A DNA stretch of 64,000 bases from Convolutriloba macropyga. Its lineage: Eukaryota. Position numbers and translations under genes: made by a program. Positions 19,025 through 47,128 of the stretch are shown here, piece after piece; position 1 is the first letter of the stretch; every line of letters begins with the position of its first letter. The notes below the pieces were generated by a model, which worked only from the letters and a program-made list of their open reading frames with translations, ran no database searches and had not been told where the DNA came from. Where the stretch lies: the NCBI RefSeq assembly GCF_964194025.1, contig NC_134473.1, positions 65,782,001-65,846,000 on the forward strand, given 5' to 3'.

Positions 19025-19111
19025 AAGTTATTGAAAATTTTTATATTGTATGTTGTGATGTTTGTCTTTAATCACTTTTTAAAATTTAATGTTCCAGTAC
19101 AGTTGATTGAT

Positions 19112-19508: not shown

Positions 19509-19550
19509 ATCATTATTTCCTAAAGACGAACAAAAATCAGTTGCTCTCTA

Positions 19551-19805: not shown

Positions 19806-19806
19806 A

Positions 19807-22152: not shown

Positions 22153-22179
22153 TCATTTTTCAATTAGTCGCGCTAGAAA

Positions 22180-22519: not shown

Positions 22520-22560
22520 TCATTTTCCCAAACAAACGTCACAGAGTACAGTCAAACATC

Positions 22561-23357: not shown

Positions 23358-23397
23358 TCATATCCTCAATTATCATTATAAAAAACGGTCGGCTAAA

Positions 23398-25024: not shown

Positions 25025-25262
25025 GTTTTGAAAACCAAAATCTTGAAATTTTTAAACAGTAATCCGTAAAATGTTGCAAATGGTTTTCAAAACTTTCTAT
25101 TGAGGTTTTGTGATTTTGTATTTAATTATTTGTATGTGTATTTGTATCTAATTCAGTTATTTCAAAAAAAGGTCTTTTGTTGAAAAGAGATTTTGGTAGG
25201 AAAACTGTGAATTAAAAACATAAGTAAAGAGGCGATTTAAATATAAGATTAATGAAAACGAG

Positions 25263-28200: not shown

Positions 28201-29593
28201 TCGGGGACCGTTATTGACTCGAAATCGAATACGATAAGATTACAAAACAATCTCAGCTCTTGCGGAACATTAATTTTTACATCTTCCAAGCGCTCGAAAA
28301 TAGTTTCAGATAACTGATAGTCTGCTGTTGGATATTTGTGTTTTGTTCTGTCTGAGCAATCCCTCATGTGGACTTCCAAATTATTTGATCTATCGAAAAA
28401 GTGATCGCATACGTAGCACCGGAACTTTTTGAGGAATTTGTTGATGTTTGCTGTCCAACAAATGTGGTTTTCATATCTCAGTAACGAAGTTGTCTTTGTA
28501 TATTTCATCGAGGAGCGACGAGTAAGTTCAGCAAGCATTTCCGATTGTTCGTCAAAAAATATTGAGTAAACTTGAATGTTTCTGTCAACTAGTGCCTCAA
28601 GAACAGGAATATCGTCCTCATGTATTCCTGGAAAGGTTTCGTCATCTCTCCTTGTTGCTGTGAGAAACGTCTGCATCAATTCCATTGTTTTTTGTTGTAA
28701 CTGAACACTACCGTACAAATCGTAAGACAATGCACGGAACATACACAAGTTGTCTTGGTAGGGCTTTTTTTTCCGCAATCCGAAACAAAACACTTAACGT
28801 GCTTGTTCTTGAGCAAAACAGATGGAATGTTTTGAGCAATACAGCCTAGAGGAACACCACTGAGGAGAAATACAAAGAAAGTGACATTTGTAAAGCAATA
28901 AAACTTCCATTTTGTGTCTGGACGTTGATTGATTAGATTTGGTAAAATTTCATTTTCTCTCAGCTTTGATTTAATATAATTGAGATCTGAGTCATCAGAG
29001 AGAACCATCGGATTTAAAAATATGGGGTTGTTATCTGCTGCGTAGTAGTAGCGAAACTCTTCAGGATTTTGCACACTCTGCAGCACGAATCCAAACGAAA
29101 TACTGATTTTAGCTGAACTGGGTAACTCGTTGTAAACACAATCCAATTTTTCTATCACTGTTTCATGATTGATTTCCATTATTTTGAAGTTGTGAACTTT
29201 CTTTCGGGACAATTCAAGAACCGAGTCTCGCAGAAAGTGTTGAACCGTTTGAAGTTCACTGTGAAGAGCGGGAGATTCTCCATAGATAGATAAGTCAACT
29301 TCCTCGTAGGTGCTAAGAGTTGAACGTTGGTGACTTTTTTTTTTGTGATGAAGGAGTTGATAATACGTAGAGAAGGATAGGAGACAGCTGCTACAAGAAA
29401 ACTTCTTCTTGATAATCAGAGACGGTGCATGTACAGAAGCAATGTGTTTCTGCAATTTTGCTTCGTCCGGAAATGACTGTGAGCATTGTGAACATCTTTT
29501 TGCGTGTAGCTTCTGATGTCTGCTCATGTTGGATTTCATAATAAGCTTATTGCAGGAAGAACACTGTTCCTTTGGGTTAGAATATCTGGGCAT
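25263..29593 (-). pseudogene. POLB: Protein-primed family B DNA polymerase (~1440 aa) with N-terminal C2H2 fingers; one frameshift and one nonsense codon
   Basis: Exonuclease motifs FDFES, GFNSSRYDL, YNNKDV. Polymerase motifs IDASQLYPFSM, KLIGNSSYG, EMDTDS. Frameshift in T8 at 28765-28772; in-frame TAA at 27186-27188 within MLKLG*TLPNLAN. Confidence 0.95.
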
Positions 29594-29779
29594 TTTCGCT
29601 GAAAATCAAAATAAAATGTAAGATTGGAAGTGAGAAACGAGGAGTACAAAAATATTGTTAAAATGAAATTTGCGATGGAATAAAAATTTGTCAGAAGTTG
29701 GAATGATTATTGTACTCAATTGCACTCAATTCGGTAAACCTGGAAAGAGAACATAAACGGAAATGAAAAGTCCTTCATC

Positions 29780-29975
29780 AAATATGGCGTAATTATGTCA
29801 TAATGACGTAATTTTGTCGTTTTTACGGCATAATGACAACACTATGACGTAATTTTGACGTTATTATGACGTAATTATGACAACACTATGACCTAATTGT
29901 GACGTGCTATGTTAATGTGATGTTATGATTAATTGTGACAATAATATGGTGACTAATTGGATAATCACGTGAGAA
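29780..29975 (-). promoter_or_regulatory. Cluster of ATGACGTAAT/TGACGT (ATF/CREB-type) motifs upstream of pPolB
   Basis: Three ATGACGTAAT copies plus TGACGT variants and TCACGTGA, ~190-380 bp upstream of the pPolB ATG. Confidence 0.4.
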
Positions 29976-30051
29976 TTTTATGATTTTTAATGGTTTTTTG
30001 TAACCAATAATTGGAAATTTATTCTTACCTCCCAAAAACAAGTTTCAATAA

Positions 30052-30820
30052 TAGCAAACTTACCAGTTTGTTTTTGGATTTGGAAGCGAAGTGAAGTGTT
30101 GCAATATCTACTATTGGGGGAAGTTGTGGCTGGCTAAAATGGTCCAGTTGAAATACAGTAACAAAAGAAGATTTCTATTAGTTAAATTTGTTTGCTTACC
30201 CGCTTCAATACTGCAAGTTTTTAACTTGGAACTCTTCTTGCTGCAAGCAGAAAGAAACGAAGACTATCTGAAGAAACGATAAATTAAAATAGAATTTTGA
30301 TCAACTGACTTTTAGAAGTTGTTTGAAATAATGAATAGGAGTAGTGGCTTGGGAATAGGAGCAGTGGCTTAATAAAAGCAAACTTACCAGTTCGTTTTTT
30401 TTTGGATTTGGAAGCGAAGTGAAGTGTTGCAATATCTACTCTTTGCGGAATATTTTGGCCGGCTAAAATGATCCAGTTTAAATACAGGAACAAAGGAACA
30501 TTTCTTTTAGTTGAAATTGTTTGCTTACCCGCTTCAACACTGCAAGTGTTCAACTTGAAACTGTCAACAAGGAGAAAGAAACAAAGTCTATCTGAAAACT
30601 GTCAACTTGAAACTGTCAACAAGGAGAAAGAAACTGTCAACTTGAAACTGTCAACAAGGAGAAACAAACAAAGTCTATCTGAAAACAAAAAGATAAATTG
30701 AAACTGTCAACAACGAGAAAGAAACAAAGTCTATCTGAAAACAGAAGTTAAATTGTATTAGAATTTTGACCAACTGATTTTTAGAATTTGTTTTGAAATA
30801 ATGAATGGGAGTAGTGGCGG
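30052..30820. repeat. Subterminal tandem duplication (~325 bp) and short microrepeats in the Polinton right arm
   Basis: agcaaacttaccag...gaagcgaagtgaagtgttgcaatatctact at ~30052 and ~30377; ttgaaactgtcaacaaggagaaa repeated across 30550-30750. Confidence 0.8.
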
Positions 30821-30849
30821 ATGAATGAGTAATCCAAACTAATTTGTTA

Positions 30850-32247
30850 TTGAGGGATTATCTTGCTAATCCCTTTCGTGTGAACAGCTTGGGTATCATG
30901 CTGTGCGGTACATTTTTGAAAATCACGTAAGTCGTACATAACTGTGAGTCATCATATCTAATGTAATATTTAAACATTTTATAGCTAATCCCCTTCGTGT
31001 GAACAGCGTGTGTATCATGCTGTGAGGTACGTTTTTGGAAATTTACATTATTAAAGTGTAAAATGGTAGGGGGACAATGACCTTACTGATTTGTTGTTAA
31101 AGCACTATCTTGCTAATCCCCTTCGTGCGAACAGCTTGGGTATCGTGCTGAGAGGTACGTCTTTGGCATTAGTAAAGTGTAATATGGGATGGTTAAATGA
31201 CCTTACAATTTTGTTATTGAGGTACTATCTTTCTAATCCCTTTCGTGTGAACAGCTTGGGTATCATGCTGTGAGGTACATTTTTGAAAATCACGTAAGCT
31301 GTACATAGTGTAAATGAGTCATCTTATCTAATTTAATATTAAAACATTACCTAGCTAATCCCCCTTCGTGTGAACAGCTTGGGTATCATGCTGTGAGGTG
31401 CATTTTTGAAAATCACGTATAACGTACGTAACTGTAGATGAGTCATCCTACCTAATTTAATATTAAAACATTACCTAGCTAATCCCCTTTCGTGTGAACA
31501 GCTTGTGTGTCATGCTGTGAGGTACATCTTTAGAAATTGACATTAGTAATTTGTAATATGGTAGGGGGTCAATGTCCTTACTAATTTGTTGTTAAGGCAC
31601 TGTCTTGCTAATCCCCTTCGTGTGAACAGCTTGGGTATCATGCTGTGAGGTACACTTTTGAAAATCACTTAAACCGTACGTAAGTGTAAATGAGTCACCC
31701 TATCTAATTTAATATTAAGACATTACCTAACTAATCCCCTTTGAGAGAACAGCTTGGGTATCATGCTGTGAGGTACGTCTTTGGAAATTTACATTATTAA
31801 AGCGCAATATGGGAATGAGTAAGCCTTACTAATTTAATATTAAGGGATTAACTTGCTAATCCCCCTCGTGTGAACAGCGTGGGTATCAAGCTGTGAGGTA
31901 CACTTTTGAAAATCACTTAAACCGTACGTAAGTGTAAATGAGTCACCCTATCTAATTTAATATTAAAACATTACCTAACTAATTCCCTTTGAGAGAACAG
32001 CTTGGGTATCATGCTGTGAGGTACGTCTTTGGAAATTTACATTATTAAAGTGCAAAATGGGAATGAGTAAGCCTTACTAATTTAATATTAAGGGATTAAC
32101 TTGCTAATCCCCCTCGTGTGAACAGCGTGGGTATCAAGCTGTGAGGTACGTCTTTGGAATTTGAGCGAAAATGGGCTATACCTAATCTTAATACATAGGT
32201 ACTTCCTTTTACCCCCCCCCCCCCTGATCTGCTTAACTATTACTACT
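30850..32247 (-). repeat. Right TIR with 11 copies of the same core
   Basis: Reverse-complement core gctaatcccc...gtgaacagcttgggtatcatgctgtgaggtac repeated from ~30865 to ~32149. The terminal ~350 bp is nearly identical to the left end. Confidence 0.93.
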
Positions 32248-32469
32248 GACAATATAGAATTCTAGACTTCAAGTTGAATGATTGAAATTTTTTTAATCAA
32301 AGACAGTACTCAAATTTTCTCCAACAATGATCCAGGATAATTCGAAGAAACCCATTCGGTGCTAGGAAACAAAAATTGGTTTGGCCCCGCCCCAGTGTTT
32401 TTCTGACCGACAGTTGACTTTTTTTATTATAACTTCAAGACAAAGCTATACCAATTTTTACGATCAACA

Positions 32470-34555
32470 TTTATCACAAAGCTATAGGATGTCTGCATAC
32501 ATCTTTGCAATGGGGAGTCTTTGCATTGGAGTGTTATTGGGGTGTATTGTTTGGACAACTTATCATTGTGCCTCTTTTTCACGTGGTTGTCTTCGTATTG
32601 CTAGTGTTCTGTGTGTTGCCTTCACGGTTCTGACAGTGATGATTTCTGTATCAGCTCCCACAGTGAATCTACGGTTCTTTTTCACGAGCTGCGCAGACTT
32701 CCTTGGAATTTATACCCCCCCCCCCTCCCCCCCGCGTTTGACGACTACTGGGATCTTTTGTGCTGCGTCTCTTCCCATCTGCTTATTGACAGCCCTCTAC
32801 GTCGTCTGCTCTTTCGTTCTTGAAGTGTTTGTTCCTGAAGTCTACTCTCGTAGCACTATTATTGCCGTCACTGCCTACAGCGGTGTCAATTAGTTTTGCT
32901 GTGGTGCTGTCTTTCTCTTTGACAGAGATCCGGTTAGAACCCTTCTTGTCCACATTTCAATTTCTTCTTTCGTGACCAGCTGCTCTGATTGCTTCCCCAA
33001 ACGGTCTGCATTGAAGTCTGACTTTACCGTGTCGTCGGATTCGTGCCCCCACCTAATGTGCGGACATGCTTGGTTTATGTGCGCGAGACTCATAGGTTGT
33101 GCATCCTGCATTGCACCATTAGTTGAGCGCTGCTGCGTCATCTTCGAGTTCTTGCGGATCTTCTGTGCTCTGATGTAGTTTTATCCAGAGCGTAGGCCGG
33201 GCCCTTGTTATAAACTAGCCTGCTGTGCTCACACTGTCTCTACTCTGTTTCATGTACCACAGTTTCGTCTCGTCTTATTCTGACAGTTTGTTGGTGTTGT
33301 CAGTATGTATCTCGCGTTTTGTGTTCGTTGTCTGAGTCAGGAGATCGGTGTTGCCATACTTCTCGCATCCATTTCTCCATCTTTGGTAGGAGCGTGGACG
33401 TTTTTCTGAGGAGTTTTTTCCAGATTTCGTATCGAATACATCGTTACATTGATAAATCAGCTTCTTCTGTCTATGGACAAACCAGCTGACTAGCCTTGAC
33501 TTACTTTTCCTAGCTTAAGGAGGGTTTCAACTTCACTGTCTGGCCCAGTTGCTTTGTCTGTCGAATGATTCCGTTGTCTTCTTACCTGGGTTTCTAGCAT
33601 TTCCTCATCGAAGGGCTCAGTCCCTGTCAGTTGCACTTTGATTACATGACTGGTGGTACAGATTTCTACCATGATTGCTTGCCAGTACTAACTTCTTTCG
33701 CTGTGGCCAAATGGGGGCTGGAGGAAGGTTTCTCAATTTCTCCGGAGCTGATGTGTTTGAGGAGTCTTTTTCCTTCTTTCAGAGATTGTAGCAGAAGGCG
33801 TAAAAGTAGCGTCGTATTTCTACTCGAAGGCCTCTTTATGGGCGTTTGTTCTTTCTTTCTACTCACAAGCTGGAAATTTTTACTCTTATTTGGAAATGGC
33901 CGTGATGAACTTGTGTAATTTTGTTGTCTCATCGTGGACCTCTCTAAGATTCAGGTGGATGCCATAGATTAACTCAAACCAAGTGTGACTGGTTTCGCTT
34001 GTGATTTCAACGTCCTCGATCCTTGGTTCTATTCTATCGAAATCAATGAGATCTCTCTGAACTGCCGCTGTGCTCTGTTCTTTTCCTTTGTCCCTTCTTT
34101 GACAGCACTTCTATTTATAGCCCAGTGAACGCTCCCGTCATTTTGTCAATCACATTCCTTCCCGTGTTTATGAGTCGTGCTTCTCTTGTCATTAGTTCGA
34201 TTTCATCAGCTGTCCTTATGGCGTTCACAGGCGTTTTCGGATCAGAGTGCATCTGGAAGCTGGAGACCACTATATTTGCTAACTGAAACAACAACTGCAT
34301 GTGAACGTGGCCCCCTTTGATGATGTTGATTTTCTGGCTTTTCGTTCACCTCGGACTTTGTTAATGTTTCCGCACTCAATCTTTTTGCTAGACTTCGGGG
34401 TGCTTCTGATGTCTGATCTACTTCGCTCGACGCCTCTGCTTGACCTTTGCGTGCTTATGACTACTTTCAACATGCTCTTACGTGTCTCCTCAGTGCTACC
34501 TTGTTGCCACAATTTGAGAGAATTGGACAAGTGAGCAGTTGGCTACTGTAATATT
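32470..34555 (-). mobile_element. Highly decayed, internally deleted R2-like (RLE) retrotransposon, copy c
   Basis: Minus-strand CCHC remnant CNAGCTTYESLAHINQACPH...RIRRH (~33030-33120) and RLE-like PDL...LIDTAVGSD (~32860-32935). Ends approximate. Confidence 0.6.
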
Positions 34556-34580
34556 CAACACAGTCAACTATGACCCAGAA

Positions 34581-34667
34581 GGGAGTTATGACTCTCAAGG
34601 AAAGATGACTCTAAGAGAGTCATAGTGATTCCCTCCTGTGTGCTCCGAGAGTTATAGTAACTCCCGC
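34581..34667 (-). other. Paralogous cassette of 28S R2-target-like sequences upstream of R2 copy c
   Basis: gggagttatgactctcaagg / taagagagtcatagtgattccc / gagagttatagtaactcccgc. Confidence 0.8.
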
Positions 34668-35349
34668 GGAACTCCCGTGTTATGATTGCCTAGAGTAAGC
34701 TAAGGTTTTACGAGTATTCGTTTGAATGTTTCCATCCGATACTTACGAGAGCGGCTTCTTATATCAAAATTTTGATTTTCCAGCGCTTGTTCATCTGGCT
34801 TTCACTGTCGTTTTCTGTTCAGAGAAGAATTGGTCTTCATGTCATCTCCTTTTGGAAGTTGGAGACCCCTATACGTGCTGTAACTGACGCCTCCAACTGC
34901 ATGTGAACACGACCTTCTTTGCTGAGGTCGATATCTCCTGGGCTCTTCGCTCACTTCGGACTTTGTTGATGTCTCCGCGCGCAACCCTAATGCTAGACTA
35001 TTGGGCTCACGTGTCTTCTTTCCGCAGGCTCTCACATTGGCTCGTCAGTGATCCTTGTTGCCAGCTGGCTACTTGAAGATCCAATGTTCTCATGCCGGGA
35101 GCTGTTTCCTTGCTAGCCATATTTTCTTTGCTTTGATTGTCATGTGAGTTTGGTAACCGATCACTGCTGATCACATCGCATATGCAGAAGATTGCGACCT
35201 CTACACTCTTTCAGTGCGATCTAGAGGAAGGTGGTGTCTCTGGTCTCATGCTCCATGCAGTTTTGAGGTTCTGCGTCATGATTGGCTGGAGTCAAATAAC
35301 GATATACGTGTTCTCGTTCGCATCGTACTTTTTTTTGCAAACACTAAAT

Positions 35350-38345
35350 CAACTCTTAAAGTAAATCTAGAAATCTAATTCATTGTAAATATGCGACATA
35401 AATCATTTGAGTTTGGATTTGCATTCAAGTGTATGCTAGCCATGAGCTTTAGCACTGTCTATGTGCGGTCGGGCGACTAGATCCTTTCGGTTCTGAAGTC
35501 GTCGTCATCGCTGAGCTGTGAGCACTCTGTGAACCCGCTTCTCCCACTGCTGGAATGTCCTGGTTGATCTCTTAAGACACCTCACAATGTGTCCGGCTTG
35601 TCAATTATTGCATTACTTCTGAGACATGGTAGTATTTGGGCCTTGGCTTGTAAGGGGTCGTTCAAGGTTGTTGTCACTGCATATGATGCAGTCTATCATC
35701 CATGCCTCTTCATCTGTCCACGGCATGTTGAGACCGACTTCCTGGTGCCTGTCTTGTTTGGACAGCCGGCGCTGATAGGGTGCCTTGGCCCCGCTTCTCC
35801 AAGATCACCTTTGCAAGGTCACACAATAGTTGTGTCTTCTGATCCTATCGCCCCAGCTTCTAGGACACACTTAGAGAATGTGTCCCAGCGTCTCCTTTCT
35901 ACCACAAGCATCCCATAAAGATTCTTTTCCGCTGTACCACCTCTGCATCTTGGCCTTTGTTGTTTTCAGGTTGCCTCTGATTTCTATGATGATTCTTGAT
36001 TTTGTTGAAGGCGGACCCTGTCATGAGCAGTGTCGCGTTGGTCAAGACTGCATTACCCCCACACTTTCGCACTGTGTTGAGACCAGCTCCATCAACTGTT
36101 GATTGCAAGGTGCCCCTGTTCTAACTCAGTTCTTTGATGCTGTGTGGAGTTACAATGTCCATGGTAGGCCTTGCTTCTTCCATGCCTTGAGGCTCTTGAT
36201 GAACCCTGTCTGATTGAGGGTAATGACTGCTGAGTCTTCGTCTCTCATAAATCTGGTGAGCCTTGCCTCCTGCATCAGTGGAACCCTCCTCTGCAACTCA
36301 GGTTTGTCCAGTCCTGCTTCGTCAAAATCAGCCTGAAACATCACCTTGGGCGTGCCTTTTGGTCACCTTATAAATTGTCTCAGTCTTCCTGATGACTCAC
36401 CGGCAAGGTGAGTCATCAGTCTCATGATGTCTAAACCGGCAAGTTTCTGCTTGATTGTTGTCTTCGTGAGGACTATCTGATAGCTAGCACTTGGGGATGC
36501 AGTACGTCTACAGGATTCAGGTCCGCTGATGTGTCTTTAGAGGAGCTCTCCTATAATTGTCCAGCTTTTCTCCAGCTTTTTATGCAGTTTGTCGTTGTTA
36601 CCCTTGGCCCTGTCTCGAAGCCCAAGTACTTATATAAGGACTCTGCTGTCAACGTGGGGAGGCCTCCTGCCCTGCTGCTGAACAGTGCTCTGAATTGTCA
36701 CTCTCTGTCTGTCCTTTGGCACTGTGCCCACAGTGTTGCACACTTCTTAGCATTGAGAGCGCGGCAACATTTTTCGAGCAGCTTCCAGTCTGTTGAATGA
36801 ATCCTGGAGCCCTGTCTGTTCCTTCGCTAGCTGGATGTTGTCGGCGTAGGCGAGGTAATTCAGGTTCTGTGGCCAATTCGATTCCAGTCGTCTGGGGTAA
36901 TGTCTTCAACACACTTTCAATCGCCAGGTTGAACAGGATATTAGCGATGGATCACCAGTCTGGGTCCCTTGGATTCGTGTTTCCCAGTTAATCTCCGATA
37001 TTTTGCCGTGTCTCATATAGCCCCTCTTAATATATCTGAGGATCTTTTGGTCCCTATGGGCTGCTTGTGCTAGGGTCCTGTGGGTCACACTACCAAAGGC
37101 CTCAGGTCTTCGAATGCCAGTTTGCGGCCCTATCTTTGTTTTTTGCCTCACTGATGATGTCCTGTGGCAGTAGAGAATTTATTGCTGTCCCGTTTACCCT
37201 CTTAAAATTCTTGTGTCTGATGTTGTCTTCTAGGTCTTCAAGTCCTGCGCAGCCAAACACTTGTGAAACACGCTGGTCGCTACACTCGCAGCCAGGAGCC
37301 ACTCGGTTAGATGTTCGTCTAATAGCCAAAGATTGAAATGGGAGACCGGCTTCGTCAAAGGGATGCCTGCAGTTGTCCTCCTGATCACCCTGTCTGGTCC
37401 ACTGGCTGTCTGTCCCATGGTCTGCACACTTCTGATCAGTTCTTCGATGGTGATTGGAGTGATCCACCCCTGGCATCTAATGGTGACCAATCGATCATGT
37501 CTATCTCGAGGAGCTGTTGCCATGCATCAAGCAACCCCGTCTTGTTGATGGTGTTAATCTCTCCAAACTTCTCCCAAGACCATGCTAAGACAGAAGCTGC
37601 TGTTTTTCCCTATTTCGTCTGTAGAGCTGCAGTGTTGAATACCGCTGTTGTCTCAGACCCCTCTTTGATCGTCAAGGTTGCTTACGAGCTGTCTGTCCGG
37701 CACCCGTCTTCCCTGGTTCTGGAGCGAGGGTTTTAAGCCACATCTGTCCGTCACTCTCAACATATTGCGTGAGTTCGTCGTTTGTCATATTGCAATGAAA
37801 GTCCAGTCTGTCCTCCGAAGTGTCCTGCACCGCAAATTGAGCGAAACCAGTTGGGTACTTTTGCTTGGCCACTAACGGGTTTCTGACGGGGATCCCTGCC
37901 CTCATGCGCAACCTTTGATGAGCCAGGCTGCGATGTCTGTCTTGTGGCTTTTTGACTTTTTCTGCTTCAAACCAAGCTCACTCCCGACCCGACACTGTCT
38001 TGTTGAGAACATCGTCGTCTCCAGTTGAGGCCAGACTTTTCTTCTGATTTAGGGTTGTGTTTGTTTGGAGTACTGTACCGGAGTACAGACTTTTTTTACC
38101 CAGCTTTTGGCAATTTTTTAAGGTGGTCAGCGCACACCAGACTGCCTTTGATTTGATATGGCTCCAAAACCCTGTTTTTTGGTGGTTTGCTTTCCGCGAA
38201 AGTTTGTTTCATTGTTTTCCTGGTCCGCGGTTTGGTGAGTGGTTTTGTAACCACTGGGCAAGTTTCTAAGTTTTGTCCATTCCGGATATTATTGATGGTG
38301 TGCTTGGATCAGCTGCTGGTGGCGGTTTCCAGTCGGACCCCGAGG
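35350..38345 (-). mobile_element. Decayed R2-like (RLE) retrotransposon, copy b
   Basis: TASGPD, ILFNLAIE, LNYLAYADNI, DEAGLDKPELQ, STVDGAGL, DACGRKETLGHIL...IRRH. Collinear with copy a. Confidence 0.85.
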
Positions 38346-38373
38346 ATATTATACAGTCAATTTTGACCCAGAA

Positions 38374-38460
38374 GAGAGTTATGACTGTCAGGGAAAGATG
38401 ACTCTAGGAGAGTCATAGTAACTGCCGTCTGTCTGCTCCGAGAGTCATAGTTACTCCCGC
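38374..38460 (-). other. Cassette of three short 28S R2-target-like sequences upstream of R2 copy b
   Basis: 38440-38460 is the exact reverse complement of GCGGGAGTAACTATGACTCTC. A second degenerate copy at ~38405-38428 and an inverted copy at ~38374-38392. Confidence 0.85.
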
Positions 38461-39079
38461 TGAGCTTCTGAATGGGGATTGGCTAGAGTCAGGTAAGGCA
38501 TTACGAGGTCTCATTCACATTGTTCCATCGCATGTTAAGATGGAGAACACTGCATAAGCTATAACTGACACCACAAATGCATTTGAACGAGGAATCCGTT
38601 GCCGCGGTTGGAATCTCTTGGATTCTTCCTTCGCCTCTGACTTTCTTGATGTCTCTGCGCTCAATCCTGCTGATGGTCTTTGGGGTGCTTTTGTCTTATT
38701 TCCACAGGCTCTCACTTGGTTTCTCAGTGCTGCCCTTCGTCAGTGCTGCCACTTTACTCGAGCTGTGTGGATAAGTCAGCACCTGGCTCCTGAAAGATCC
38801 AATGTTTTCAGACCGCGAAGTTGTTTCCCATCTAGCCATCCTTTATTGCTTTGCTTGTCAACTGAGTTTGCTTATTGATCTTGTCGATTGAGGATCAGAT
38901 CGCATCTCTCGGACGATTACGACTTCTAGTCCTTTTCAGCATGATCTAGATAAAGGCGGTGTGCCTATTTTCGTGCTCCTTGCAGTTTGAGCTTCTGGGT
39001 CATGGTTGGCTAGAGTCGGGTAACGATTTACGAGTACCCATTCACATACTCCATTTTTTTGCAAACACTGTATTCACGC

Positions 39080-42000
39080 TCTATATAAAGCTAGACATCA
39101 ATACATAATAAAGTATATCTAAGATATGACCTCATACGGAGAGTCCTTAGTGAGTGGGTTGGCATACGAGGGCATGCGAGCCGTGAGTTTGTGAGCACTG
39201 TCATTGTGTGGTCGGGTGACTAGATCCTTGCGGTTCTCTAGTCATCGGTGAGTTGTGACCACTTCCTGAAAACGCTTCTCTTCCACTGCTGGAATGTCCT
39301 GGCTGATACCGCAAGACATCTCACGATGAGCAGTTGGAGGTGACTCTTCTTCAGGCGCAGGTTCCAGAGTATTGTCACGTCTTAGGTGCCATTGCCCCAC
39401 GCCAGCTCATGATCAGGGCGCCAAATGTCACACTTCTAGCCTTTGTCATGCACATCACGTCTTGCACAACTTCTGGGACATGGCAGTAGTTAGCCTTTGC
39501 TTGGTACTGATCATGTTGTCACTGCAGATGATGCTGTCTATCACCCAGGCCTGTTTGTCTTTCCACACCACTAGGTCCGGCTTCCCGATGCCCTGCCTTG
39601 TCTTGATCACTGGTTCGGCAAGTGAGCTGTAGCCCTGCTTCTCCTGTAGTCCCTTAGCTAGGTCCACGCACATGTCGTGTCTCCTGATGCTCTCGCCCCA
39701 GCTTCTGGGACACACTTGGAGGATGTGGGCCAGCGTCTCACGTCTGCCGCAAGCATCACAAGAGGGGTCCTGTCCTCTCTGCCACCATCTTCGCCTTGGT
39801 TCTCTCTCCTCTCTCTCCTAGGCGTTCGCCGTTCATTCGGCATGCCCTCCAGTCGCGCTCGAACATTTCCTCACATGACGGGCAAAGTTTGATGCTGACT
39901 TGTACTCGTTACAGTATTCGCACCATTTCGGTGGCTTGATAACTGTTTTGGTTGTTCTGGGAGTCCTTGGGTTGCATTTTTTAATGTGATTCTGGTAGTT
40001 GCTGAGCATCTTGAAAATTGAGTCACATTTTCCGCAATAGAACACCGTCTTCGTCTGCTCGTGGATCCTCTTTACGTGGCATTTTAGCCCTGCTGCAGTC
40101 TTGCATACTAGTCCACATTCGTCGCATTCTAGGCTTGGGGTTGGTGGTTTTTCATTCCTTTCCCTCTTTTCCGCGAATCTGAACTTGTTTGCTGTTTTGC
40201 TTTCCCAGTCCTCCAAGTGCTGCATTCGTTTCCTGACCATAGCTTTCCATTGTTTCCTGTCCTGTGCCCACTTGTGTGCTTGTCTCCAGTCAATGCCAGC
40301 TTCTGTTAACAGTTTCCTCCAGTAAAAAAGCGTCTTCCTTTTCCTGGGGTTTTAGGAAGTCCTTCGAGGCTTCCCAGCCATCCCATGACAAATTTTCACA
40401 GGACGTTCGTCTGACATTCGGAGGATATGACCAATTCTCTCAAGAGTCCTTTTCTCGATCTTCCATCTTAAACTCTTGACCCCGAGAATATTCCTCACGT
40501 CTTGCATGTTCTTTCCTTCTGCTTCCATTTGTATGAGCGGTGGTGCCTTGTTGTTGCTCCACACTGAGCGGTAACATTTGTCGATCCAACTCTGTAACAT
40601 TTTGATCTCTCCAATGTACTAGGGTCTTGCTGCACAATCGAAGAGTAGGCCACTCTCAACGCAAGTTTCCACAATCTGTGCCTGCTTGGTTTTTGGAAGC
40701 TTGGACTTCTTTAGTTGGTTCCGACACCGCGCCCGCAGTGTTCCAGCACGTTTTTTGCGGCACTTTATATCTTCTTTTGGTCCGAGCCAGCGACCCAGCA
40801 TTCTGATTCCATTTGCCTCTTCGCTGGAAAAGACCACCCGCTCCTCCTTGTCTTCGTTGTTTCGCTCTTCAAACTTGTTCATGACGTCCTTCACTATGTT
40901 CAGACCATCTTCGAGTTCCCTTTTCTGTCCAATGATGGTTGTGTCGTCCGCGAACAAGGAAGAGCAGACATTTCTTGTTTCCGTTTCACTGTTGGCTTTT
41001 TCCACTCTGTCCGGGTGAGGGATTGATGGCGATGGTATCCACTTCCACTCCACACCTGTCGTTTCGTACTCTTCATCACTGTGTTCTTTTCTCTATCTCT
41101 GCGATCCGCATGACTACCTGATGGAATATATTGAAGAGGCAAGGAGAGGTAGAGCAGCCTTCTCGAAGCCCTCTCTCTGGTGTCCATTCGTCGCTTTCGC
41201 CCTCCATTCCCTTGACACGGTATTTCGTAGCCTCATGCAAATCCATCAAGGAGTTCAAGAAACTCCCATCCATTCCGTATCTTCGCAACATTTCCCACAA
41301 GGCCGGTTTATTCACTCTCGGGTAGGCCTTTCTTAGGTCGAGAAGCGTAGCAGTGGGGTCGGTGCTCTCTTCTATTGGCAGGTTCTGTTGCTCTCGTCTC
41401 TTCCGTAGGTCATCTGCGTCTTCCTTCATACGAATGATCACTTGGGTGGCGTCTGTTGTTGATCTGCCCGGCCGGAAACCGCTCTGATTTTCGTCTAACA
41501 GCCCTAATTTTTCAGACCACTGCCTGAGTCGTTTGGACAAAACTTTAGCCAAGATTCTGCTGCCCATGGCAAGAAGACAGACACCTCTGTAGTTGTTAGT
41601 GTCGTTTCTGTCCCCCTTCTTGTGTAGTGGAACTATTTGGCCCACTTTCAATGCTTCATTCCAGGTGGGGGCTCTCTTCTCAAAGCTTTCTGTAACGATT
41701 CTCACTACGTGGTTCTTGGTGGATTGTGAGCTCAGTTTGATATACTTTATTCTGACATTGTCCGCGCCCGGGGCTGAATCCTTCATATCTTTCATGCATT
41801 CTTCAATTTCGTGGGGAGAGGGAGTCTCGTTCAGCTTCTTGTCAGCTTCAACATGCCGTGGATCGTTCCGCCAGTCTCCCATTTTCCTCACCCAGGTCAT
41901 CAGCTCTTCAGGCATGTTCTCGTATCTCTGACTCGATACTTGTTGGAAGTGCGTCTTGAATTCGTCGGTTGTGATTGTGGTGCCCGAATTGGGTTTCGAA

Positions 42001-45000
42001 TCCCTCCCGCCAAGTTGCCTCAGGAGGCGGAACATGCTGCCCATATCTCCTTTTTCGTTTGCATCTCGACATTCGTTAAGGATATTGTCCCACCACGCTC
42101 GTTCCAAGTCCGTCAAGCAGTTTTTCATGTTTCTTCGCGCCACCTTGAGCTGGTCCTTAGCCCACTTGCTGTTCCTTCCCACTTCAGTGTCTTCATTTCT
42201 GCATCTCACTGCTTCAGCAATCTTTTCATGAAGTGATTCAAGCTCCTCTTCATGACCTCTTGTCCAAGGGTTGGCAACATGACGCTTCTTGATTCCACAT
42301 ATCTCTCTGACTGCTTTTTCCATTATCTCCGAGATATCTTTCCAGCTGCAGTCCTCGCTCAGGGTCGTACTGAGGACCTCGGTTCTTTCCAAGAATTCTA
42401 GTGCCTTCTGTTGGACATTTAGAGCTTCCCAGTTTAAGTTTGGTTTCCTCTGTGTCCTGGCAAGGCGGTTGTTTTTAGATGTTGTTCTGATGGTTAGAGT
42501 TATTGGTTGATGATCGGACAGTGCGTTGTCATCCGTAACTTTCATACTCTTGCAGAGTTTGTGTCTTTCGTCCTTCCTCATTACAAAACCATCTAACTCG
42601 TACCATCTCTTATGGCTTTCGTTGAACCACGTCCCCCTCTTTTTGATGTTAAAAAAGGAGTTAACCCATTGCATCTCATTCGTTTTGAACCAGTCTATGA
42701 GGTCTTCCCCTGCAATTGTCGATGGAGTGGTTAGGCCATACTTTCCATTGGCTGGGCCCCGCTCCTCTCTTCCTATATGTGCGTTGTGGTCTCCGCCAAT
42801 AACCAAGGCTAGTGACATCGGGGTTCTCGCCAGTTCGCTTTCTAGGAAGTGACGGTACTGGTCAATATTTTCCGGACCATTGCTCCATAAGGGTTGATAC
42901 ACAGACACGAAGCGTATTTTCTCTAGGGTTATAGATGTTACTCTGTCTCCAAAGTTCTTCTTCTGTCCAAAGTTCTTCTTGTATCCACTGGTTGATTCGC
43001 CTTGGTTGTCATCAAGTTGCCTCTGATCTTCGTCACTGCGATGAAGGTGGACCCTGTCAGGAGCAGTGTGCCTTTGGTCAAGATCCCATGACCCCCACAT
43101 TGTCGCATTGTCTTGAGTCCAGCCCCATTCACTGTGGTGTAGAGTCGGTCTCCCTGTCTGACTCTGAGCTCTGCTATGATGTGAGGGGTTACACTGTCAA
43201 TGCCTTGCTGCTTCTATGCTCTCCAGCAGTTTCTTGAAGAAACCTGATTGTGTGAGCTACCACTGCTGGGTCATCATCTCTCAAGAGTCTTGTTAACCTA
43301 GCCTCCTGCATCAGAAGAACCCTCTTCTGTAGTTCAGGTATGTCCAGTCCTCCGTCATCAACGTCAGCGTGGAAGATCTCCTTGAATGTGTCCTTGGGCC
43401 ATCTCATGAACTGCCTCACAGTCCCCTGATGACCCTGTCTAAGCCACCCAGTACTTGCTTCGTTGTCTTCGTGAGGACTATCTGGTGGTAGAGACTAGGG
43501 ATGCAGTACGTCTGCAGTATCCCGATTCGTTGCTGTGGCTTCAGGGGGGCTCTCCTCAGATCATCTAGCTTCCTCTCCAGCTTCTTGATGAAGTTTGTCT
43601 TAGTGCCATGTGACCATGTTTGAATGCTCAAGAACTTGTAGAAGGACTCGGCTGTCATCGTAGTGAGACCTCCTGCCCTGCTTCCGAACATTGTGCTAGG
43701 GTTTATCACTATTTGTCGGTCCCTTGGCACTGTGTCTAGAGTTGAACACTTCTTTGCATTGAGAGAGAGAGGCCACATCTTTCTTGCTCTGTCTCCAGTC
43801 TGCTGATTAAGTCCCGGAGCCCTGTCTGTCTTTGCTAATAGCACAACGTCGTCGGCAAAGGCGAGGTGATTCATCTTCTCTGTGCCCATCTGGATTCCAG
43901 TCCTCTGGGGTAGTGTCTTCAGCACCCTCTTCATCGCAAGGTTGAAGAGGATTGGGGAGATGGGATTCCCCTGTCTGACTTGGAGATCAACATTGGAGAT
44001 TGACGGGTCAAGACGTCTGGTGAAGCCCTCCAAAGGGGTCACCCTTTGGAGGGCTTCACCAGACGTCTTGACCCGTCAATCTCCCACGTTGTGCCCTGTC
44101 TCTTGTATTCCTTCATGATGTATCAGGATGTATCACGTATTGGGATGTATCACTATGCTTGCTTCTAGTGCTTCTTCTGCCTGGGCCTTGTGGGTCACAC
44201 TGTCTAAGGCCTTCTTCACATAGGCCAGTTTGAATCCCTGTGTGTGTGTCTTTGCCTCACTAATGATGTCCTGCAACAGAAGAGAGTAGATTGCTGTTCC
44301 GTCTTCCCTCTTGAAGCCCTTCTGTCTGATGTTGTCATCGATGTCCTTAAGTCATGCAGCCAAACACTTGTGGAACACCCAGGACAGTACACTTGCCACT
44401 GTGATGGTCTGAAGTCCATTGGTTCCTGAGACCCTTACACCTTGGGATGAACACTGTCCTTACAGTCAGGAGCCACTCGGGTAGATGTTCAGCCAATAGC
44501 TAGAGATTGAAGTGGGGAACCATCTTCTTGAAGGGGATGCCAGTCATCGTCTTCCTGCTCACCCTGTCAGGTCCAGTGGCTGTCTGTCCCATGGTCCGCA
44601 CACTCTTGATCACTTCGATGGTGATTGGAGTGACCATCACTGACCGCTGATTGTGCTCAGATCGATTGTCTCTGCCACAGTCTCGAGGAGCTGCTGCCAT
44701 GCATCTAGGAACACTGTCCTGTCTGTGATGGGGTTCTCCAATGACCCATCCATGACTGATGGAGCTGCCTTTGCCCTGTCTCGTTTGTAGAGAGCCTGTA
44801 GTCTTGCATACTGAAGTCGTCTTGTGTCCTTCTTGGAACGTCTGGGTTGTTTACGAGCCCCTGGTCCACCACTCTTCTTCTCTGGTTCTTGAGAAAGGGT
44901 TTGTAGCCACATATGTCCCTCCCTCTCGACGTACTGGGTGAGATCGTCATGCATCATATTTTGCCATTCATCTGGACGATGCCAGCATCTCTACATCAAT

Positions 45001-45566
45001 GAATGTCTCAAGACAGTGCCTTGGCCTGTAATTTTGCTCAGTGGTCTCGACCCTGTCTTTTGCCTGCATCAGTGCCACAAACTGCTGATTTTTTTTCCAA
45101 GCCTTTGAACAACTCTGCGGACCGATGGGGAAACAGTCTGGCCAGTTGCTCATTCTGTTGCTTCTGGGATGCAGGATTTAGGCCCATCATCGCTTCTTTG
45201 ACCAGAGCCATCTCCTCGAGTGTCCACCTTGCTTTGAATCTCCTTGTCTTCTGGGCCTGCATCTGATGGTAGTCATCTGGGTGCCTGTTTCTTGTGTGTA
45301 CTGAGAGACCAGTCTGTCCTTTGAAGGGTCCAGCTCCTCAGATTGAGCAGCACCAGTTGGGGGCTATTGCTTGGCCACTTACTGGTTCCTGGAAGGGATC
45401 CCCGCCTGCATGTCTACCCTGTGATGCGATGCGCCCATATGTGATGCCCCTGTCTTGTGACTTCTGGTCTTGTGCTGCTTCAGGCCTAGCTCACTCCTTA
45501 ACGGACCCTGTCAGCAGATGTCACAGGTCCACATCGAGGCCACTTCTCCACAACTAAAGAAGCAGC
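39080..45566 (-). mobile_element. R2-like (RLE) retrotransposon, copy a, 5'-truncated and interrupted by an RTE-like LINE
   Basis: N-terminal C2H2 fingers (WTCDIC...GLKQHKTRSH; GLSVHTRNRHP) and Myb (KARWTLEEMALV). RT motifs VRQGNPISPILFN, HLAFADD, APLKPQQR. CCHC CDACGRRETLAHILQVC...IRRHD and RLE KPDLVVWKDKQAWVID. Confidence 0.92.
39802..42995 (-). mobile_element. 5'-truncated RTE-like APE-RT LINE nested in R2 copy a
   Basis: 12-bp TSD ttcgccttggtt at 39790-39801 and 42996-43007; GA-rich 3' tail. APE motifs GGDHNAHIG and SDHQPI; RT motifs NYRGVCLL, QSGFRPGRST, GLREGCSTSP, LFADDT; C-terminal zinc fingers. Confidence 0.92.
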
Positions 45567-45567
45567 A

Positions 45568-45649
45568 TTATGAGAGTCAGAGTTACTCCCGTCGTTTACC
45601 TGCGTTTATTTTAATATCTTCTCTTTGACTTTCAGAGCGCTGGGTAGAA
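45568..45649 (-). other. Degenerate 28S rDNA fragment ending at the canonical R2 insertion site
   Basis: Minus strand ttctacccagcgctctgaaagtcaaagagaagatattaaaataaacgcaggtaaacgacgggagtaactctgactctcataa versus 28S TTCTGCCCAGTGCTCTGAATGTCAAAGTGAAGAAATTCAATGAAGCGCGGGTAAACGGCGGGAGTAACTATGACTCTCTTAAGG. Confidence 0.9.
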
Positions 45650-45830: not shown

Positions 45831-46145
45831 TTTTGCTCGAACGAAGTTTGAGGCAATTATTGTAAAAATGTGTTTTACAATAATGATTTTTCTGAGTGAT
45901 TTCATTTACGAGTATTCAGAAATGAAGTCTGTTACTAAAATAAAACCGATTTTGTGTCGACGGTGTATAGCCCATATATTGAAGTGCTGATTTTCCTCGA
46001 CTCTGAGCGCAGAGGTCGCGGGCGCGAACCCTTCATTAGTCAGAACTTGCACCATAAACTATTCTCTAGCCTATGCCCCATTCTAAATTGGTTGCCTCGC
46101 CAGTCGTTCGAGAGCAATTCGTCCGACGTTAATTGGTTTATGTTT
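45831..46145 (+). mobile_element. HINE/Helentron-like non-autonomous element, family B
   Basis: 5' ttgctcgaacga; 3' tcgttcgagagcaatt, then a ccgac... hairpin and tttatgttt. Confidence 0.6.
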
Positions 46146-46425: not shown

Positions 46426-47128
46426 GTTAGTATAGCTTTTTTGCGCGATGATAATGTGAAAAACAACCGGTTCAATTAGTTTTGTTTACATGAAAGGTTT
46501 GATTTTGCTATTTTATCGAATTGAAAAACGGCTGATATATTTTAAGAGGTGTAATTTTATGACATCACAGTAATTGTTAAAAACTGTTTAATTGCTTTCG
46601 AAAAAATTGAAACAATTATTGTAAAGGCGCGTTTTTAATGCAAAATTTTCGCTCGACCGTTTTCTTCTAGAACATTCTTTTTGAGTGACTGTTTCACGCT
46701 TGACTTGATTTTTTGAGTTACATGAATTGCGCACATTCAGAAATTAACGTTGTTCAAAATTAAATCCGATTGTGAAGCCCGTGTATAGTACTGGTTAATG
46801 ACGCCCCATTAAAACTACCCTAAATGTTATCCGAGGGGTCGCGTGTTCGAACGACACCCTAGTCAGAAGTTTTTGCACCATAAAAGTTTATCGCCCGCCA
46901 GTCGTTCTAGAGCAATTCTTGTGATGTTAGTCGGTTTATGTTCATTTTTTTTTAGTTTAAAAAATACTCTGTTAGAAAGTTTTGTTGGATTTTGGTTTAT
47001 ACTTTTTTAAAGTAACGTAAAAGGAATAACTGTAGATTAAATGTTTACACATTCATAAATGCAATAGAATTTAGTTGATCCCAACTTTGCAACGATGCTG
47101 GGTTTAAATTTAGTTTTGTATCGTTTAG

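What the first reader, a model, noticed from the sequence alone, without database searches (positions are those of the whole stretch)
32470..45649. Non-rDNA array of three R2-like elements, each preceded by a 28S R2-target mimic (possible decoy landing-pad locus)
Seen: on the minus strand the order is [82-bp 28S fragment ending at GACTCTCATAA] - R2a - spacer module - [3x 28S target cassette] - R2b - spacer module - [3x 28S target cassette] - R2c. All copies share one orientation, there is no other rRNA sequence, and the array appears to sit in an intron antisense to the host gene. Known: R2 elements normally insert specifically at ...GACTCTCTTAAGG^TAGC in 28S rDNA, and the sequence upstream of the cut is what their ZnF/Myb domains recognise. 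Inference: either ectopic mini-targets repeatedly capture R2 away from rDNA (a trap that would give antisense R2 RNA when the host gene is transcribed, as in piRNA clusters), or this R2 lineage carries its own target and builds arrays outside rDNA.
Basis: partly seen in the sequence, partly recalled or inferred. Interest (0 to 1): 0.85.

Follow-up and report, generated by a model that had tools for sequence, protein, structure and literature searches.

The report
Decayed R2 jumping-gene stack outside rDNA
A chromosome site far from the ribosomal genes holds dead copies of the ribosomal-gene-specific jumping gene R2, of at least three different ages, stacked head to tail behind an 82-letter scrap of 28S rRNA gene; the short "28S mimic" cassettes are scars that this R2 also leaves at its normal insertions, not landing pads.

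Summary
On the minus strand there is an 82-bp 28S fragment (45649-45568, 86.6% identical to this genome's 28S) that ends at the R2 site. There are also two homologous cassettes of partial 28S repeats and no other rRNA sequence.

Only two clear R2 copies exist:
- R2a (45556-39054) is 5'-truncated. It looks 7 kb long only because an unrelated APE-type LINE is nested in it, flanked by a 12-bp target duplication.
- R2b (38369-35329) is full length.

Cassette 2 is followed by only about 25 nt of R2, fused by a deletion to a third copy of a roughly 600-nt spacer. A much older R2 relic lies further on.

Intact R2 copies in this genome's rDNA all carry similar, variable tandem 28S duplications at their 5' junctions, starting at 28S position -28. 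So the cassettes are an ordinary 5'-junction by-product, already described in the literature.

R2a has decayed about 4% and R2b about 11%, so they inserted at different times, and the upstream copy is the younger. The best reading is repeated target-primed insertion at the one retained upstream 28S half-site. A decoy or piRNA-trap role is untested because no RNA data exist. The same stretch and its cassette were already noted in this scan (s1-238185, s1-238200). The finding is of moderate interest, as a variant of known arrays of rDNA-specific elements.

The parts
45568..45649 (-). 82-bp fragment of 28S rDNA covering positions -84 to -3 relative to the R2 insertion site. It is the retained upstream half-target.
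   Evidence: BLAST against this genome's own 28S gives 86.6% identity, 11 mismatches in 82. The mismatches include G-27>A and T-6>A, read directly from the sequence.
42996..45556 (-). R2a, 5' part. It is 5'-truncated, starting near codon 20 of the R2 ORF.
   Evidence: 83-84% nucleotide identity to rDNA-resident R2. tblastn with the intact R2 protein covers aa 21-861. The junction is shown.
43988..44041 (+). 54-nt inverted duplication inside R2a.
   Evidence: BLAST hit in opposite orientation to R2 positions 1975-2028.
39802..42995 (-). Nested, 5'-truncated LINE with APE endonuclease, RT and C-terminal C2H2 fingers. It is unrelated to R2 and has a GA-rich tail. It is flanked by the 12-bp target-site duplication AACCAAGGCGAA (43007-42996 and 39801-39790).
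   Evidence: Pfam finds Exo_endo_phos_2, RVT_1 and zf-C2H2. Full-length homologues have the order APE-RT-C2H2. tblastn with P0007 covers aa 134-1186. The target-site duplication was read.
39054..39801 (-). R2a, 3' part (C-terminal nuclease region and 3' UTR), ending in A7.
   Evidence: 83% identity to rDNA R2 positions 3008-3782. tblastn covers aa 865-1049 at 84-88% identity. Alignment A1.
38461..39053 (-). Spacer S1. It is noncoding and unique to this locus. A motif M of about 65 nt sits at both of its ends (39047-38983 and 38525-38461).
   Evidence: There is no frame-specific conservation.
38370..38460 (-). Cassette 1: three partial copies of 28S positions -27 to about -4, separated by non-28S linkers. 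It forms the 5' junction or leader of R2b.
   Evidence: and the alignment with modern rDNA junctions.
35329..38369 (-). R2b. It is full length including the 5' UTR, heavily decayed, and ends in A8.
   Evidence: 65-78% nucleotide identity to rDNA R2 over its whole length. tblastn. 45 indels, of which 34 shift the frame.
34668..35328 (-). Spacer S2, 71% identical to S1.
34570..34667 (-). Cassette 2, with the same architecture as cassette 1.
   Evidence: the repeat finder family D4, 79% identity.
34545..34569 (-). Stub of about 25 nt of the R2 5' end. The rest of this R2 copy has been deleted.
   Evidence: Alignments A2 and A3.
34130..34544 (-). Spacer S3. It comprises the 3' half of the spacer, joined directly to the R2 stub. 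A possible, very degenerate third cassette lies near 34130.
   Evidence: The third cassette is only suggested by reading the sequence.
33046..33744 (-). R2c, a very old or divergent R2 relic. By collinearity its 3' end is predicted near 32420.
   Evidence: Two weak collinear hits with the same offset fall on R2 hallmark motifs: the ...APLKPQQR... region, and the zinc-knuckle ...LAHIxQxCP. No nucleotide similarity remains.

Best explanation
This is a fossil head-to-tail stack of R2 non-LTR retrotransposon insertions at a single ectopic site on a chromosome arm, not in rDNA. An 82-bp piece of 28S (positions -84 to -3) sits at the 5' edge. It contains the region that R2 proteins read upstream of their cut site.

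[quoted passage not shown] The order along the element strand therefore runs from youngest to oldest:
- R2a, about 4% neutral decay.
- R2b, about 11% neutral decay.
- A copy of which only a 25-nt stub is left.
- R2c, barely recognisable.

The '3x 28S cassettes' are not pads. They are tandem duplications of 28S -28 to about -4 that this R2 makes at its 5' junction in ordinary rDNA insertions. This happens because its HDV-like ribozyme is predicted to cut the 28S/R2 co-transcript at -28, so the RNA starts with 28S sequence. The duplications are then carried along as part of the element's leader.

My preferred sub-model (inferred) concerns the full-length units of the older layer. In it they carried the 600-nt spacer plus the cassette as a 5' leader. 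Each full-length insertion re-created the junction '28S half-site | spacer (first base T)', and that junction could be hit again. The last arrival, the 5'-truncated R2a from the lineage that now lives in rDNA, destroyed that junction, and the array stopped growing.

Later events were a LINE insertion into R2a, a deletion of one R2 body, and point decay of the pad itself (G-27>A, T-6>A).
For: Shown directly:
- R2 identity. Intact 1051-aa R2 copies lie exactly at the canonical 28S site in rDNA contigs. They are homologous to the solved R2Bm protein (E=3e-115) and carry two N-terminal C2H2 fingers, a Myb-like motif and a zinc knuckle.
- R2a and R2b align to the intact R2 along their whole length.
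- Different ages. In the three-way alignment, 429 sites are unique to R2b, 156 to R2a and 132 to the modern copy. By codon position (1/2/3) the counts are 119/104/176, 42/41/63 and 22/17/77. The imbalance is uniform along the element. Frameshifting indels number 34 in R2b against 18 in R2a.
- The 28S fragment is 13.4% diverged, which fits the age of R2b and not that of R2a (P=0.0035).
- The cassettes are junction by-products. The four rDNA junctions examined all carry different tandem duplications that start at GGCGGGAG, which is position -28.
- The modern 5' UTR can be drawn as an HDV-like ribozyme. Its P1 pairs GGCGGGA with UCUCGCU over 7 bp, followed by GG. P3 is CCU/AGG, P4 is GCCA-UUCG-UGGC and P2 is GUGUGC/GCACAC.
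- Published work reports cleavage at -28 and such 5' duplications in many R2 lineages (PMC3774820).
- For R2Bm, an upstream half-site suffices: the upstream motif (RUM, -34 to -22) and the cleavage-site motif (RASIN) are required, while downstream sequence +6 to +37 is dispensable (PMC10499050).

Support for the 5'-leader sub-model:
- 0 head-to-tail dimers against 54 canonical 3' junctions in rDNA.
- The spacer starts with T, at the position of T+1.
- No spacer copy follows R2c.
- The spacer is unique to this locus.
Against: - The spacer's origin is unknown, and no living R2 copy carries it. A retrotransposing unit that included the spacer is therefore inferred only from junction positions.
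- Equal branch lengths of the three spacer copies (33, 29 and 40 of 260 sites) are also what DNA-level duplication would give. They cannot date the arrival of S1 if the spacer evolved neutrally.
- A ribozyme with a J1/2 loop of about 700 nt would be unusual.
- The ribozyme fold was drawn by hand. Rfam found no HDV-type match, and self-cleavage was not assayed.
- The target rules come from silkmoth R2, which has one zinc finger, whereas this R2 has two.
- R2c rests on weak protein matches.
- Searches for other ectopic R2 relics were saturated by rDNA copies, with only 40 candidates scored. Uniqueness of the locus is therefore not proven.
Confidence: 0.58

Rival explanations
1. Double insertion followed by unequal exchange. 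In this reading a displaced rDNA/R2 junction acquired an R2 dimer. The unit R2 - spacer - cassette was then amplified at the DNA level by unequal crossing-over, as proposed for the Drosophila R1 array. R2a arrived later or was converted.
For: - The three spacer copies are equidistant, and cassettes 1 and 2 share identical architecture.
- Recombination inside R2 bodies would preserve the unit boundaries.
- There is a precedent in the R1 tandem array with 33-nt rDNA duplications between units (PMC5932611).
Against: - R2a is 2.6-fold less decayed than R2b along its whole length, with no chimeric pattern.
- R2a abuts the 28S fragment directly, without a cassette. An older first unit would therefore have had to be removed with exact boundaries.
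- R2c shares no nucleotide similarity with R2b, so it is not a same-age copy.
Confidence: 0.2
2. The spacer was a 3' tail (3' transduction) carried by each inserting R2. In this reading new copies landed between the 28S half-site and the first cassette repeat of the previous copy.
For: - Each R2 ends in a short A7-8 run that is followed directly by the spacer.
- The spacer ends exactly where the cassette begins, at 28S position -27, which is the predicted ribozyme cut. This would define a unit-length RNA.
Against: - The rDNA lineage would have had to carry the spacer from the time of R2b to the time of R2a and then lose it.
- No spacer follows R2c.
- Occupied sites with this junction are never re-used among 54 rDNA copies.
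- The base at +1 would be G rather than T.
Confidence: 0.1
3. A host-selected decoy or piRNA-type trap. In this reading the locus is kept because it captures R2 away from rDNA and yields antisense R2 RNA.
For: - R2 copies of several ages lie in one orientation in a TE-rich stretch that also holds a nested LINE and an adjacent Polinton.
- The locus is present in three samples.
Against: - There is no sign of conservation. Everything decays at a neutral-looking rate, including the pad itself (G-27>A, T-6>A).
- Only about four insertions occurred over a long time, compared with 54 or more live copies in rDNA.
- No RNA data are available.
Confidence: 0.05
4. A single-event concatemer. In this reading one reverse-transcription event with template jumps, or on a circular or multimeric RNA, produced all units at once.
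For: - Unit junctions coincide with expected RNA ends: the ribozyme cut at -27/-28 and the A-run.
- The spacer copies are equidistant.
Against: - R2a, R2b and R2c clearly differ in age or lineage.
- A regular alternation of two templates is unlikely.
Confidence: 0.04

Closest known systems
Tandem duplications of upstream 28S sequence at R2 5' junctions, caused by ribozyme self-cleavage upstream in the 28S (Eickbush, Burke and Eickbush 2013, PMC3774820)
   Same: - The repeats start at position -28 and are 13-28 nt long.
- They sometimes have non-templated linkers between them.
- They are propagated in the RNA and can become a 5' extension of the element.
- This is seen here at the four rDNA R2 junctions examined and in both cassettes.
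   Different: - Here up to three or four partial repeats are stacked.
- Fossil versions persist outside rDNA, together with a 600-nt extra sequence upstream.
Drosophila melanogaster R1 tandem array outside the rDNA, whose units are separated by 33-nt rDNA duplications (Roiha et al. 1981, as cited in McGurk and Barbash 2018, PMC5932611)
   Same: - An rDNA-specific LINE forms a head-to-tail array away from functional rDNA.
- Short rDNA-derived sequence lies between the units.
- Later TE insertions and internal deletions occurred within the array.
   Different: - That array is R1 (APE-type). It has hundreds of near-identical units expanded by unequal exchange from one dimer.
- This one is R2 (RLE-type). 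It has about four units of clearly different ages, an added spacer, and a retained upstream half-target at one edge.
Rare non-28S R2Bm insertion at a site with RUM- and RASIN-like motifs, and the RUM/RASIN target rules (Wilkinson et al. 2023, PMC10499050)
   Same: - R2 lies outside rDNA at a site that offers the upstream recognition motif at the right distance from a cleavage motif.
- Downstream 28S sequence is not needed.
   Different: - Here the ectopic site is a true 28S fragment rather than a chance look-alike.
- It appears to have been used repeatedly.
R2-derived non-autonomous elements (SIDEs; Eickbush and Eickbush 2012, PMC3414825)
   Same: The piece made of cassette 2, the 25-nt R2 5' stub and the spacer resembles an internally deleted R2.
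   Different: - It is a single copy, with no family elsewhere in the genome.
- It lacks an R2 3' end, so it is better read as a local deletion.

Membership tests
R2 (RLE-type, 28S-specific non-LTR retrotransposon) | Inserts at the conserved 28S site ...CTCTTAAGG|TAGCCAAATG | tested here: met
   The rDNA-resident relatives lie exactly there, with 54 canonical 3' junctions. R2a in the window abuts 28S position -3.
R2 (RLE-type, 28S-specific non-LTR retrotransposon) | A single ORF with N-terminal C2H2 finger(s) and Myb, a central RT, a C-terminal zinc knuckle and a restriction-like endonuclease, with no APE domain | tested here: met
   The intact copy L035:596-3751 has 1051 aa, two C2H2 motifs, WTLEE and RVT_1. 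It matches R2Bm 8gh6 over residues 253-1034 (E=3e-115). The knuckle CDACGRRETLAHILQVC is present. R2a and R2b are decayed copies of this ORF.
R2 (RLE-type, 28S-specific non-LTR retrotransposon) | An HDV-like self-cleaving ribozyme at the 5' end | tested here: inconclusive
   A complete HDV-like pairing scheme can be drawn at L035:232-290, with P1 pairing to 28S -28 to -22. Rfam gives no match, the copies are identical so no covariation is available, and there is no cleavage assay.
R2 (RLE-type, 28S-specific non-LTR retrotransposon) | Resides in rDNA units | tested here: not met
   The window copies lie at C6:65.8 Mb with no other rRNA sequence. This makes them ectopic members of the family, not members of another family.
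TE-derived tandem array formed by double insertion plus unequal exchange (R1-array type) | Head-to-tail units separated by a short duplication of the target | tested here: met
   Cassettes of 28S repeats lie between the units, and all units share one orientation.
TE-derived tandem array formed by double insertion plus unequal exchange (R1-array type) | Units of equal age that were amplified as DNA | tested here: not met
   R2a, R2b and R2c differ strongly in decay. Only the spacer copies are equidistant.
piRNA cluster or transposon trap | Production of 24-32-nt small RNAs antisense to the trapped elements | not testable with these tools
   No RNA run holds the locus.
Functional R2 target (RUM + RASIN, as defined for R2Bm) | An upstream motif at -34 to -22 (A-31 WWWGCNNNA-22) at a fixed distance from T-6 T N A N N | T+1 | tested here: inconclusive
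   Read by eye against PMC10499050. The 82-bp fragment covers the region, but it now carries G-27>A and T-6>A. The cassette repeats lack the cleavage motif and positions -31 to -28. The rules come from another R2 clade.

The most novel reading that the evidence does not exclude
An extinct R2 sublineage escaped the rDNA by carrying a piece of its own 28S target. This was an uncleaved 5' leader that reached back to position -84. The sublineage also carried a 600-nt non-rDNA leader whose first base restores the cleavage motif. Each full-length insertion therefore rebuilt a usable landing site just upstream of itself, and a self-extending array grew on a chromosome arm. The same site later captured an R2 from the rDNA lineage. 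If true, this is a natural in vivo demonstration that the upstream 28S half-site is sufficient for R2 targeting, and it shows one route by which a strictly rDNA-bound element can colonise other DNA.
Probability: 0.3. Interest if true: 0.6.

Novelty: new variant of a known kind. Interest (0 to 1): 0.4.

Why it matters
R2 is the model site-specific retrotransposon and is now being engineered for targeted gene insertion. What a minimal target needs in living cells, and how often R2 lands outside rDNA, are practical questions for that work. This locus is a natural record of several R2 insertions, spread over time, at a site that offers only the upstream 82 bp of the 28S target. That agrees with the biochemical finding that upstream motifs guide the enzyme. 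It also shows that the 28S-like repeats in front of R2 copies should be read as ribozyme and junction scars rather than as decoys. It adds an R2 counterpart to the classical R1 arrays outside rDNA. It does not show a new host defence.

Tried and rejected
- Rfam at gathering score on the window gave 0 matches. At E-value level on the modern R2 and on 34-39.2 kb it gave no HDV-type or R2 RNA family hits.
- No tRNA genes were found by ARAGORN.
- Spacer against R2 protein, R2 DNA and 3 kb of 28S: nothing significant.
- The 65-nt motif M against the 28S site or the R2 3' UTR, by Smith-Waterman with shuffles: at best 12-14 of 500 shuffles reached the score, and the result was inconsistent among copies. 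The resemblance I saw by eye, GACTCT-AGCCAA as a deleted empty site, is therefore dropped.
- A coding reading of the spacer: similarity appears in all frames, so it is noncoding.
- Pfam on ORFs of 34.5-32.4 kb gave nothing.
- R2c by nucleotide search (nhmmer, blastn) gave nothing. Only weak protein hits were found.
- Genome search for cassette or spacer copies elsewhere found only this locus.
- Genome searches with R2a and R2b DNA were saturated by rDNA copies, with 40 of about 75 candidates scored. Other ectopic relics are therefore not excluded.
- The pattern for modern head-to-tail R2 dimers gave 0 hits, against 54 hits for the positive control.
- RNA or small-RNA evidence: no RNA run is on record.
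- Gene calls from a second assembly are simple ORF calls and say nothing about a host intron.
- I first used the equal branch lengths of the spacer copies to date S1. I withdrew that argument, because a neutrally evolving leader gives equal branches whenever it arrived.


Full report
**What is there.** The window is G000:C6:65782001-65846000 of a 1.18-Gb AT-rich animal genome. Between 32.4 and 45.7 kb the G+C content rises from about 35% to 44-50%, and the minus strand is A-rich. All the features below lie on the minus strand.

A BLAST of 3 kb of this genome's own 28S against the window finds one 82-bp fragment at 45649-45568. It is 86.6% identical (11 mismatches) and ends ...GACTCTCATAA at position -3 of the R2 site. 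The same search also finds the short repeats inside two cassettes. Rfam finds no rRNA or any other family in the window at gathering score.

**A reference R2 from the same genome.** The 19-mer around the R2 site occurs 628 times in the genome. Nearly all occurrences are on small rDNA contigs. On large scaffolds there is only C3, which is a true rDNA copy at 99.97% identity, and this window.

Several rDNA contigs showed two matches 25-41 bp apart. Four were fetched (L033-L036), and each holds a 3.7-kb insertion exactly at ...CTCTTA(AG) / poly(A) / TAGCCAAATGCC. The insertion has an intact 1051-aa ORF (L035:596-3751). The ORF matches RVT_1 and the solved R2Bm protein over residues 253-1034 (E=3e-115). 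It carries two N-terminal C2H2 motifs, a Myb-like WTLEE motif and the zinc knuckle CDAC...LAHILQVC. At least 44 near-identical copies exist, and 54 canonical 3' junctions with 29-59 A residues were counted. This is a living R2 family.

**Map of the window against that reference.**
- **R2a:** 45556-42996 and 39801-39054 together form R2a, 83-85% identical to the living R2. It is 5'-truncated near codon 20 and ends in A7. It is interrupted at 42995-39802 by an unrelated LINE.
- **Nested LINE:** its 674-aa ORF has an APE endonuclease domain followed by an RT. Full-length relatives add C-terminal C2H2 fingers. It is flanked by the 12-bp duplication AACCAAGGCGAA. This nested element is why 'R2a' looked 7 kb long.
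- **Spacer S1:** 39053-38461.
- **Cassette 1:** 38460-38370.
- **R2b:** 38369-35329, full length with its 5' UTR, 65-78% identical to the living R2, ending in A8.
- **Spacer S2:** 35328-34668.
- **Cassette 2:** 34667-34570.
- **R2 stub and S3:** after cassette 2 only about 25 nt of the R2 5' end follow. The sequence then continues in the middle of a third spacer copy (S3, 34544 to about 34130). A deletion has therefore removed one whole R2 body.
- **R2c:** further on there is no nucleotide similarity to R2. Two weak protein matches with the same offset fall on hallmark R2 motifs, the KPxQ region and the zinc knuckle, at about 33744-33046. This is a much older or more divergent relic.

The spacer occurs nowhere else in the genome. 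It is noncoding and has no significant similarity to R2 or 28S.

**The locus is not an assembly artefact.**
- Short-read contigs from two samples cover cassette 2, S2 and the R2b 3' end, and cassette 1 with the R2b 5' end, without differences and at single-copy depth.
- An independent 2016 sample also holds pieces of the locus.
- A second public assembly is 99.99% identical over 31076-53098.

**What the cassettes are.** The four rDNA-resident junctions each show tandem partial duplications of upstream 28S sequence. The pattern differs from copy to copy, and the duplications usually start at GGCGGGAG, which is position -28. Some have a few extra bases between repeats. The cassettes in the window align to these junctions and to the first bases of the R2 5' UTR.

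In the living R2 the 5' UTR can be drawn as an HDV-like ribozyme at L035:232-290:
- P1 pairs GGCGGGA (28S -28 to -22) with UCUCGCU over 7 bp.
- The GG directly after P1 can pair with the CC of loop L3.
- P3 is CCU/AGG.
- P4 is GCCA-UUCG-UGGC.
- P2 is GUGUGC/GCACAC.

This drawing is made by hand. Rfam did not detect it.

Eickbush et al. (PMC3774820) showed that many R2 ribozymes cut at -28. The RNA then begins with 28S sequence. Junctions sometimes acquire direct 28S duplications of 13-28 nt with non-templated bases between them, and such additions are propagated and can become 5' extensions of the element. The cassettes are therefore an expected by-product that travels with the element. They are not separate target mimics.

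Cassettes 1 and 2 share even their non-28S linkers, so they descend from one original junction.

**Ages.** A three-way alignment of the living R2, R2a and R2b gives these counts of unique sites:

| Copy | Unique sites (of 2569) | Codon position 1 | Position 2 | Position 3 |
|---|---|---|---|---|
| R2b | 429 | 119 | 104 | 176 |
| R2a | 156 | 42 | 41 | 63 |
| Living R2 | 132 | 22 | 17 | 77 |

The same imbalance holds in every 500-nt segment. The living lineage changed mainly at third codon positions, which indicates selection. R2a and R2b changed almost evenly across positions, which indicates decay.

Positions 1+2 give 83 changes in R2a against 223 in R2b (p=6e-16). I separated a selected component using the pattern of the living lineage (my own arithmetic on the counts). 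This puts neutral decay at about 4% for R2a and about 11% for R2b. Frameshifting indels number 18 and 34.

R2a and R2b are therefore not same-age DNA duplicates, and R2a is not a copy of R2b. R2a came later, from the lineage that is still alive in rDNA.

The 28S fragment is 13.4% diverged. This fits the age of R2b but not that of R2a (P=0.0035 at 5.2%). The pad was therefore already there when R2a arrived. R2c is older still. The order along the element strand runs from youngest to oldest.

**Mechanism.** Target-primed reverse transcription leaves the upstream target intact and places the new copy between that target and whatever lay downstream. Repeated use of one upstream half-site therefore yields exactly this youngest-first, head-to-tail stack.

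For silkmoth R2, an upstream motif at -34 to -22 and the cleavage motif T-6 T N A N N | T+1 are required, whereas +6 to +37 is dispensable (PMC10499050). The 82-bp fragment spans these positions. It now carries G-27>A and T-6>A, so it is probably dead.

The cassette repeats lack the cleavage motif and positions -31 to -28. In rDNA no R2 has inserted into an occupied, cassette-bearing site: 0 dimers against 54 canonical junctions. This argues against the cassettes as pads, and also against a model in which new copies landed between the half-site and a cassette.

I therefore prefer the reading in which the spacer plus cassette was the 5' leader of the older full-length units. In that reading each full-length insertion re-created the junction '28S half-site | spacer', whose first base is T. 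The truncated R2a ended the series. This sub-model is inferred rather than shown.

The equal branch lengths of S1, S2 and S3 (33, 29 and 40 of 260 sites) do not discriminate between the models. A neutrally evolving leader gives equal branches under any of them.

**Rival readings.**
- **Double insertion followed by unequal exchange,** as for the Drosophila R1 array (PMC5932611), explains the equidistant spacers and the identical cassette architecture. It does not explain the age differences. It also does not explain why R2a abuts the 28S fragment directly, without an older first unit.
- **A spacer carried as a 3' tail** is possible but needs more assumptions.
- **A single-event concatemer** is contradicted by the different ages.
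- **A host-selected decoy or piRNA trap** has no support. Everything, including the pad, decays. The number of captures is tiny compared with the living rDNA copies, and no RNA data exist.
- **The claim that the array is intronic and antisense to a host gene** could not be checked.

**Verdict.** It is wrong about the role of the cassettes. The finding is a new variant of known phenomena, namely R2 5'-junction duplications and arrays of rDNA-specific LINEs outside rDNA. It has moderate interest as natural evidence that an upstream half-site can direct R2.

Noticed in passing
window 16141-32255: A Maverick/Polinton-type element of about 16 kb abuts the 3' end of the R2 array. Its ORFs match the Pox_A32 packaging ATPase, the rve integrase and, weakly, a type-B DNA polymerase. 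Its terminal inverted repeats are built from tandem repeats of about 124 bp (16149-17056 on the plus strand and 30823-32247 on the minus strand). The outermost 248 bp of the two arms are 99% identical.
   Followed up: partly
window 39802-42995 (-): The nested LINE belongs to a single-ORF family with the order APE endonuclease, RT, C-terminal C2H2 fingers, and it has a GA-rich 3' tail. Relatives of 1100-1230 aa occur in marine metagenome and genome data and in an acoel (46% identity). Short-read contig depth is about 7-fold the single-copy level, so the family is multi-copy here. I did not assign it to a clade.
   Followed up: partly
window 43988-44041: A 54-nt stretch of R2a is duplicated in inverted orientation right beside its source. 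It is a small rearrangement of unknown origin.
   Followed up: no
L035:232-290 (G000:C351) and the other rDNA R2 copies: The living R2 has a compact HDV-like ribozyme candidate that Rfam does not detect. Its poly(A) tails vary from 29 to 59 A between copies, whereas the old copies R2a and R2b end in only 7-8 A. Long tails therefore look like a recent trait of this lineage.
   Followed up: partly
G000 rDNA contigs; G000:C3:24331229: About 593 copies of the 28S R2 site are assembled, almost all on small unplaced contigs. One rDNA copy sits on scaffold C3. At least 54 sites (about 9%) carry R2. Contig C1027 holds R2 pieces in opposite orientations close together.
   Followed up: no
window 38440-38460: The first repeat of cassette 1 matches 28S at 21 of 21 bases, although its surroundings have decayed by 11-13%. 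The chance of this is about 0.05, so it is not a compelling anomaly.
   Followed up: yes
window 46098-46144 and 46896-46942: A 47-nt direct repeat (85% identical) lies just upstream of the array, in the host flank. I did not examine it.
   Followed up: no
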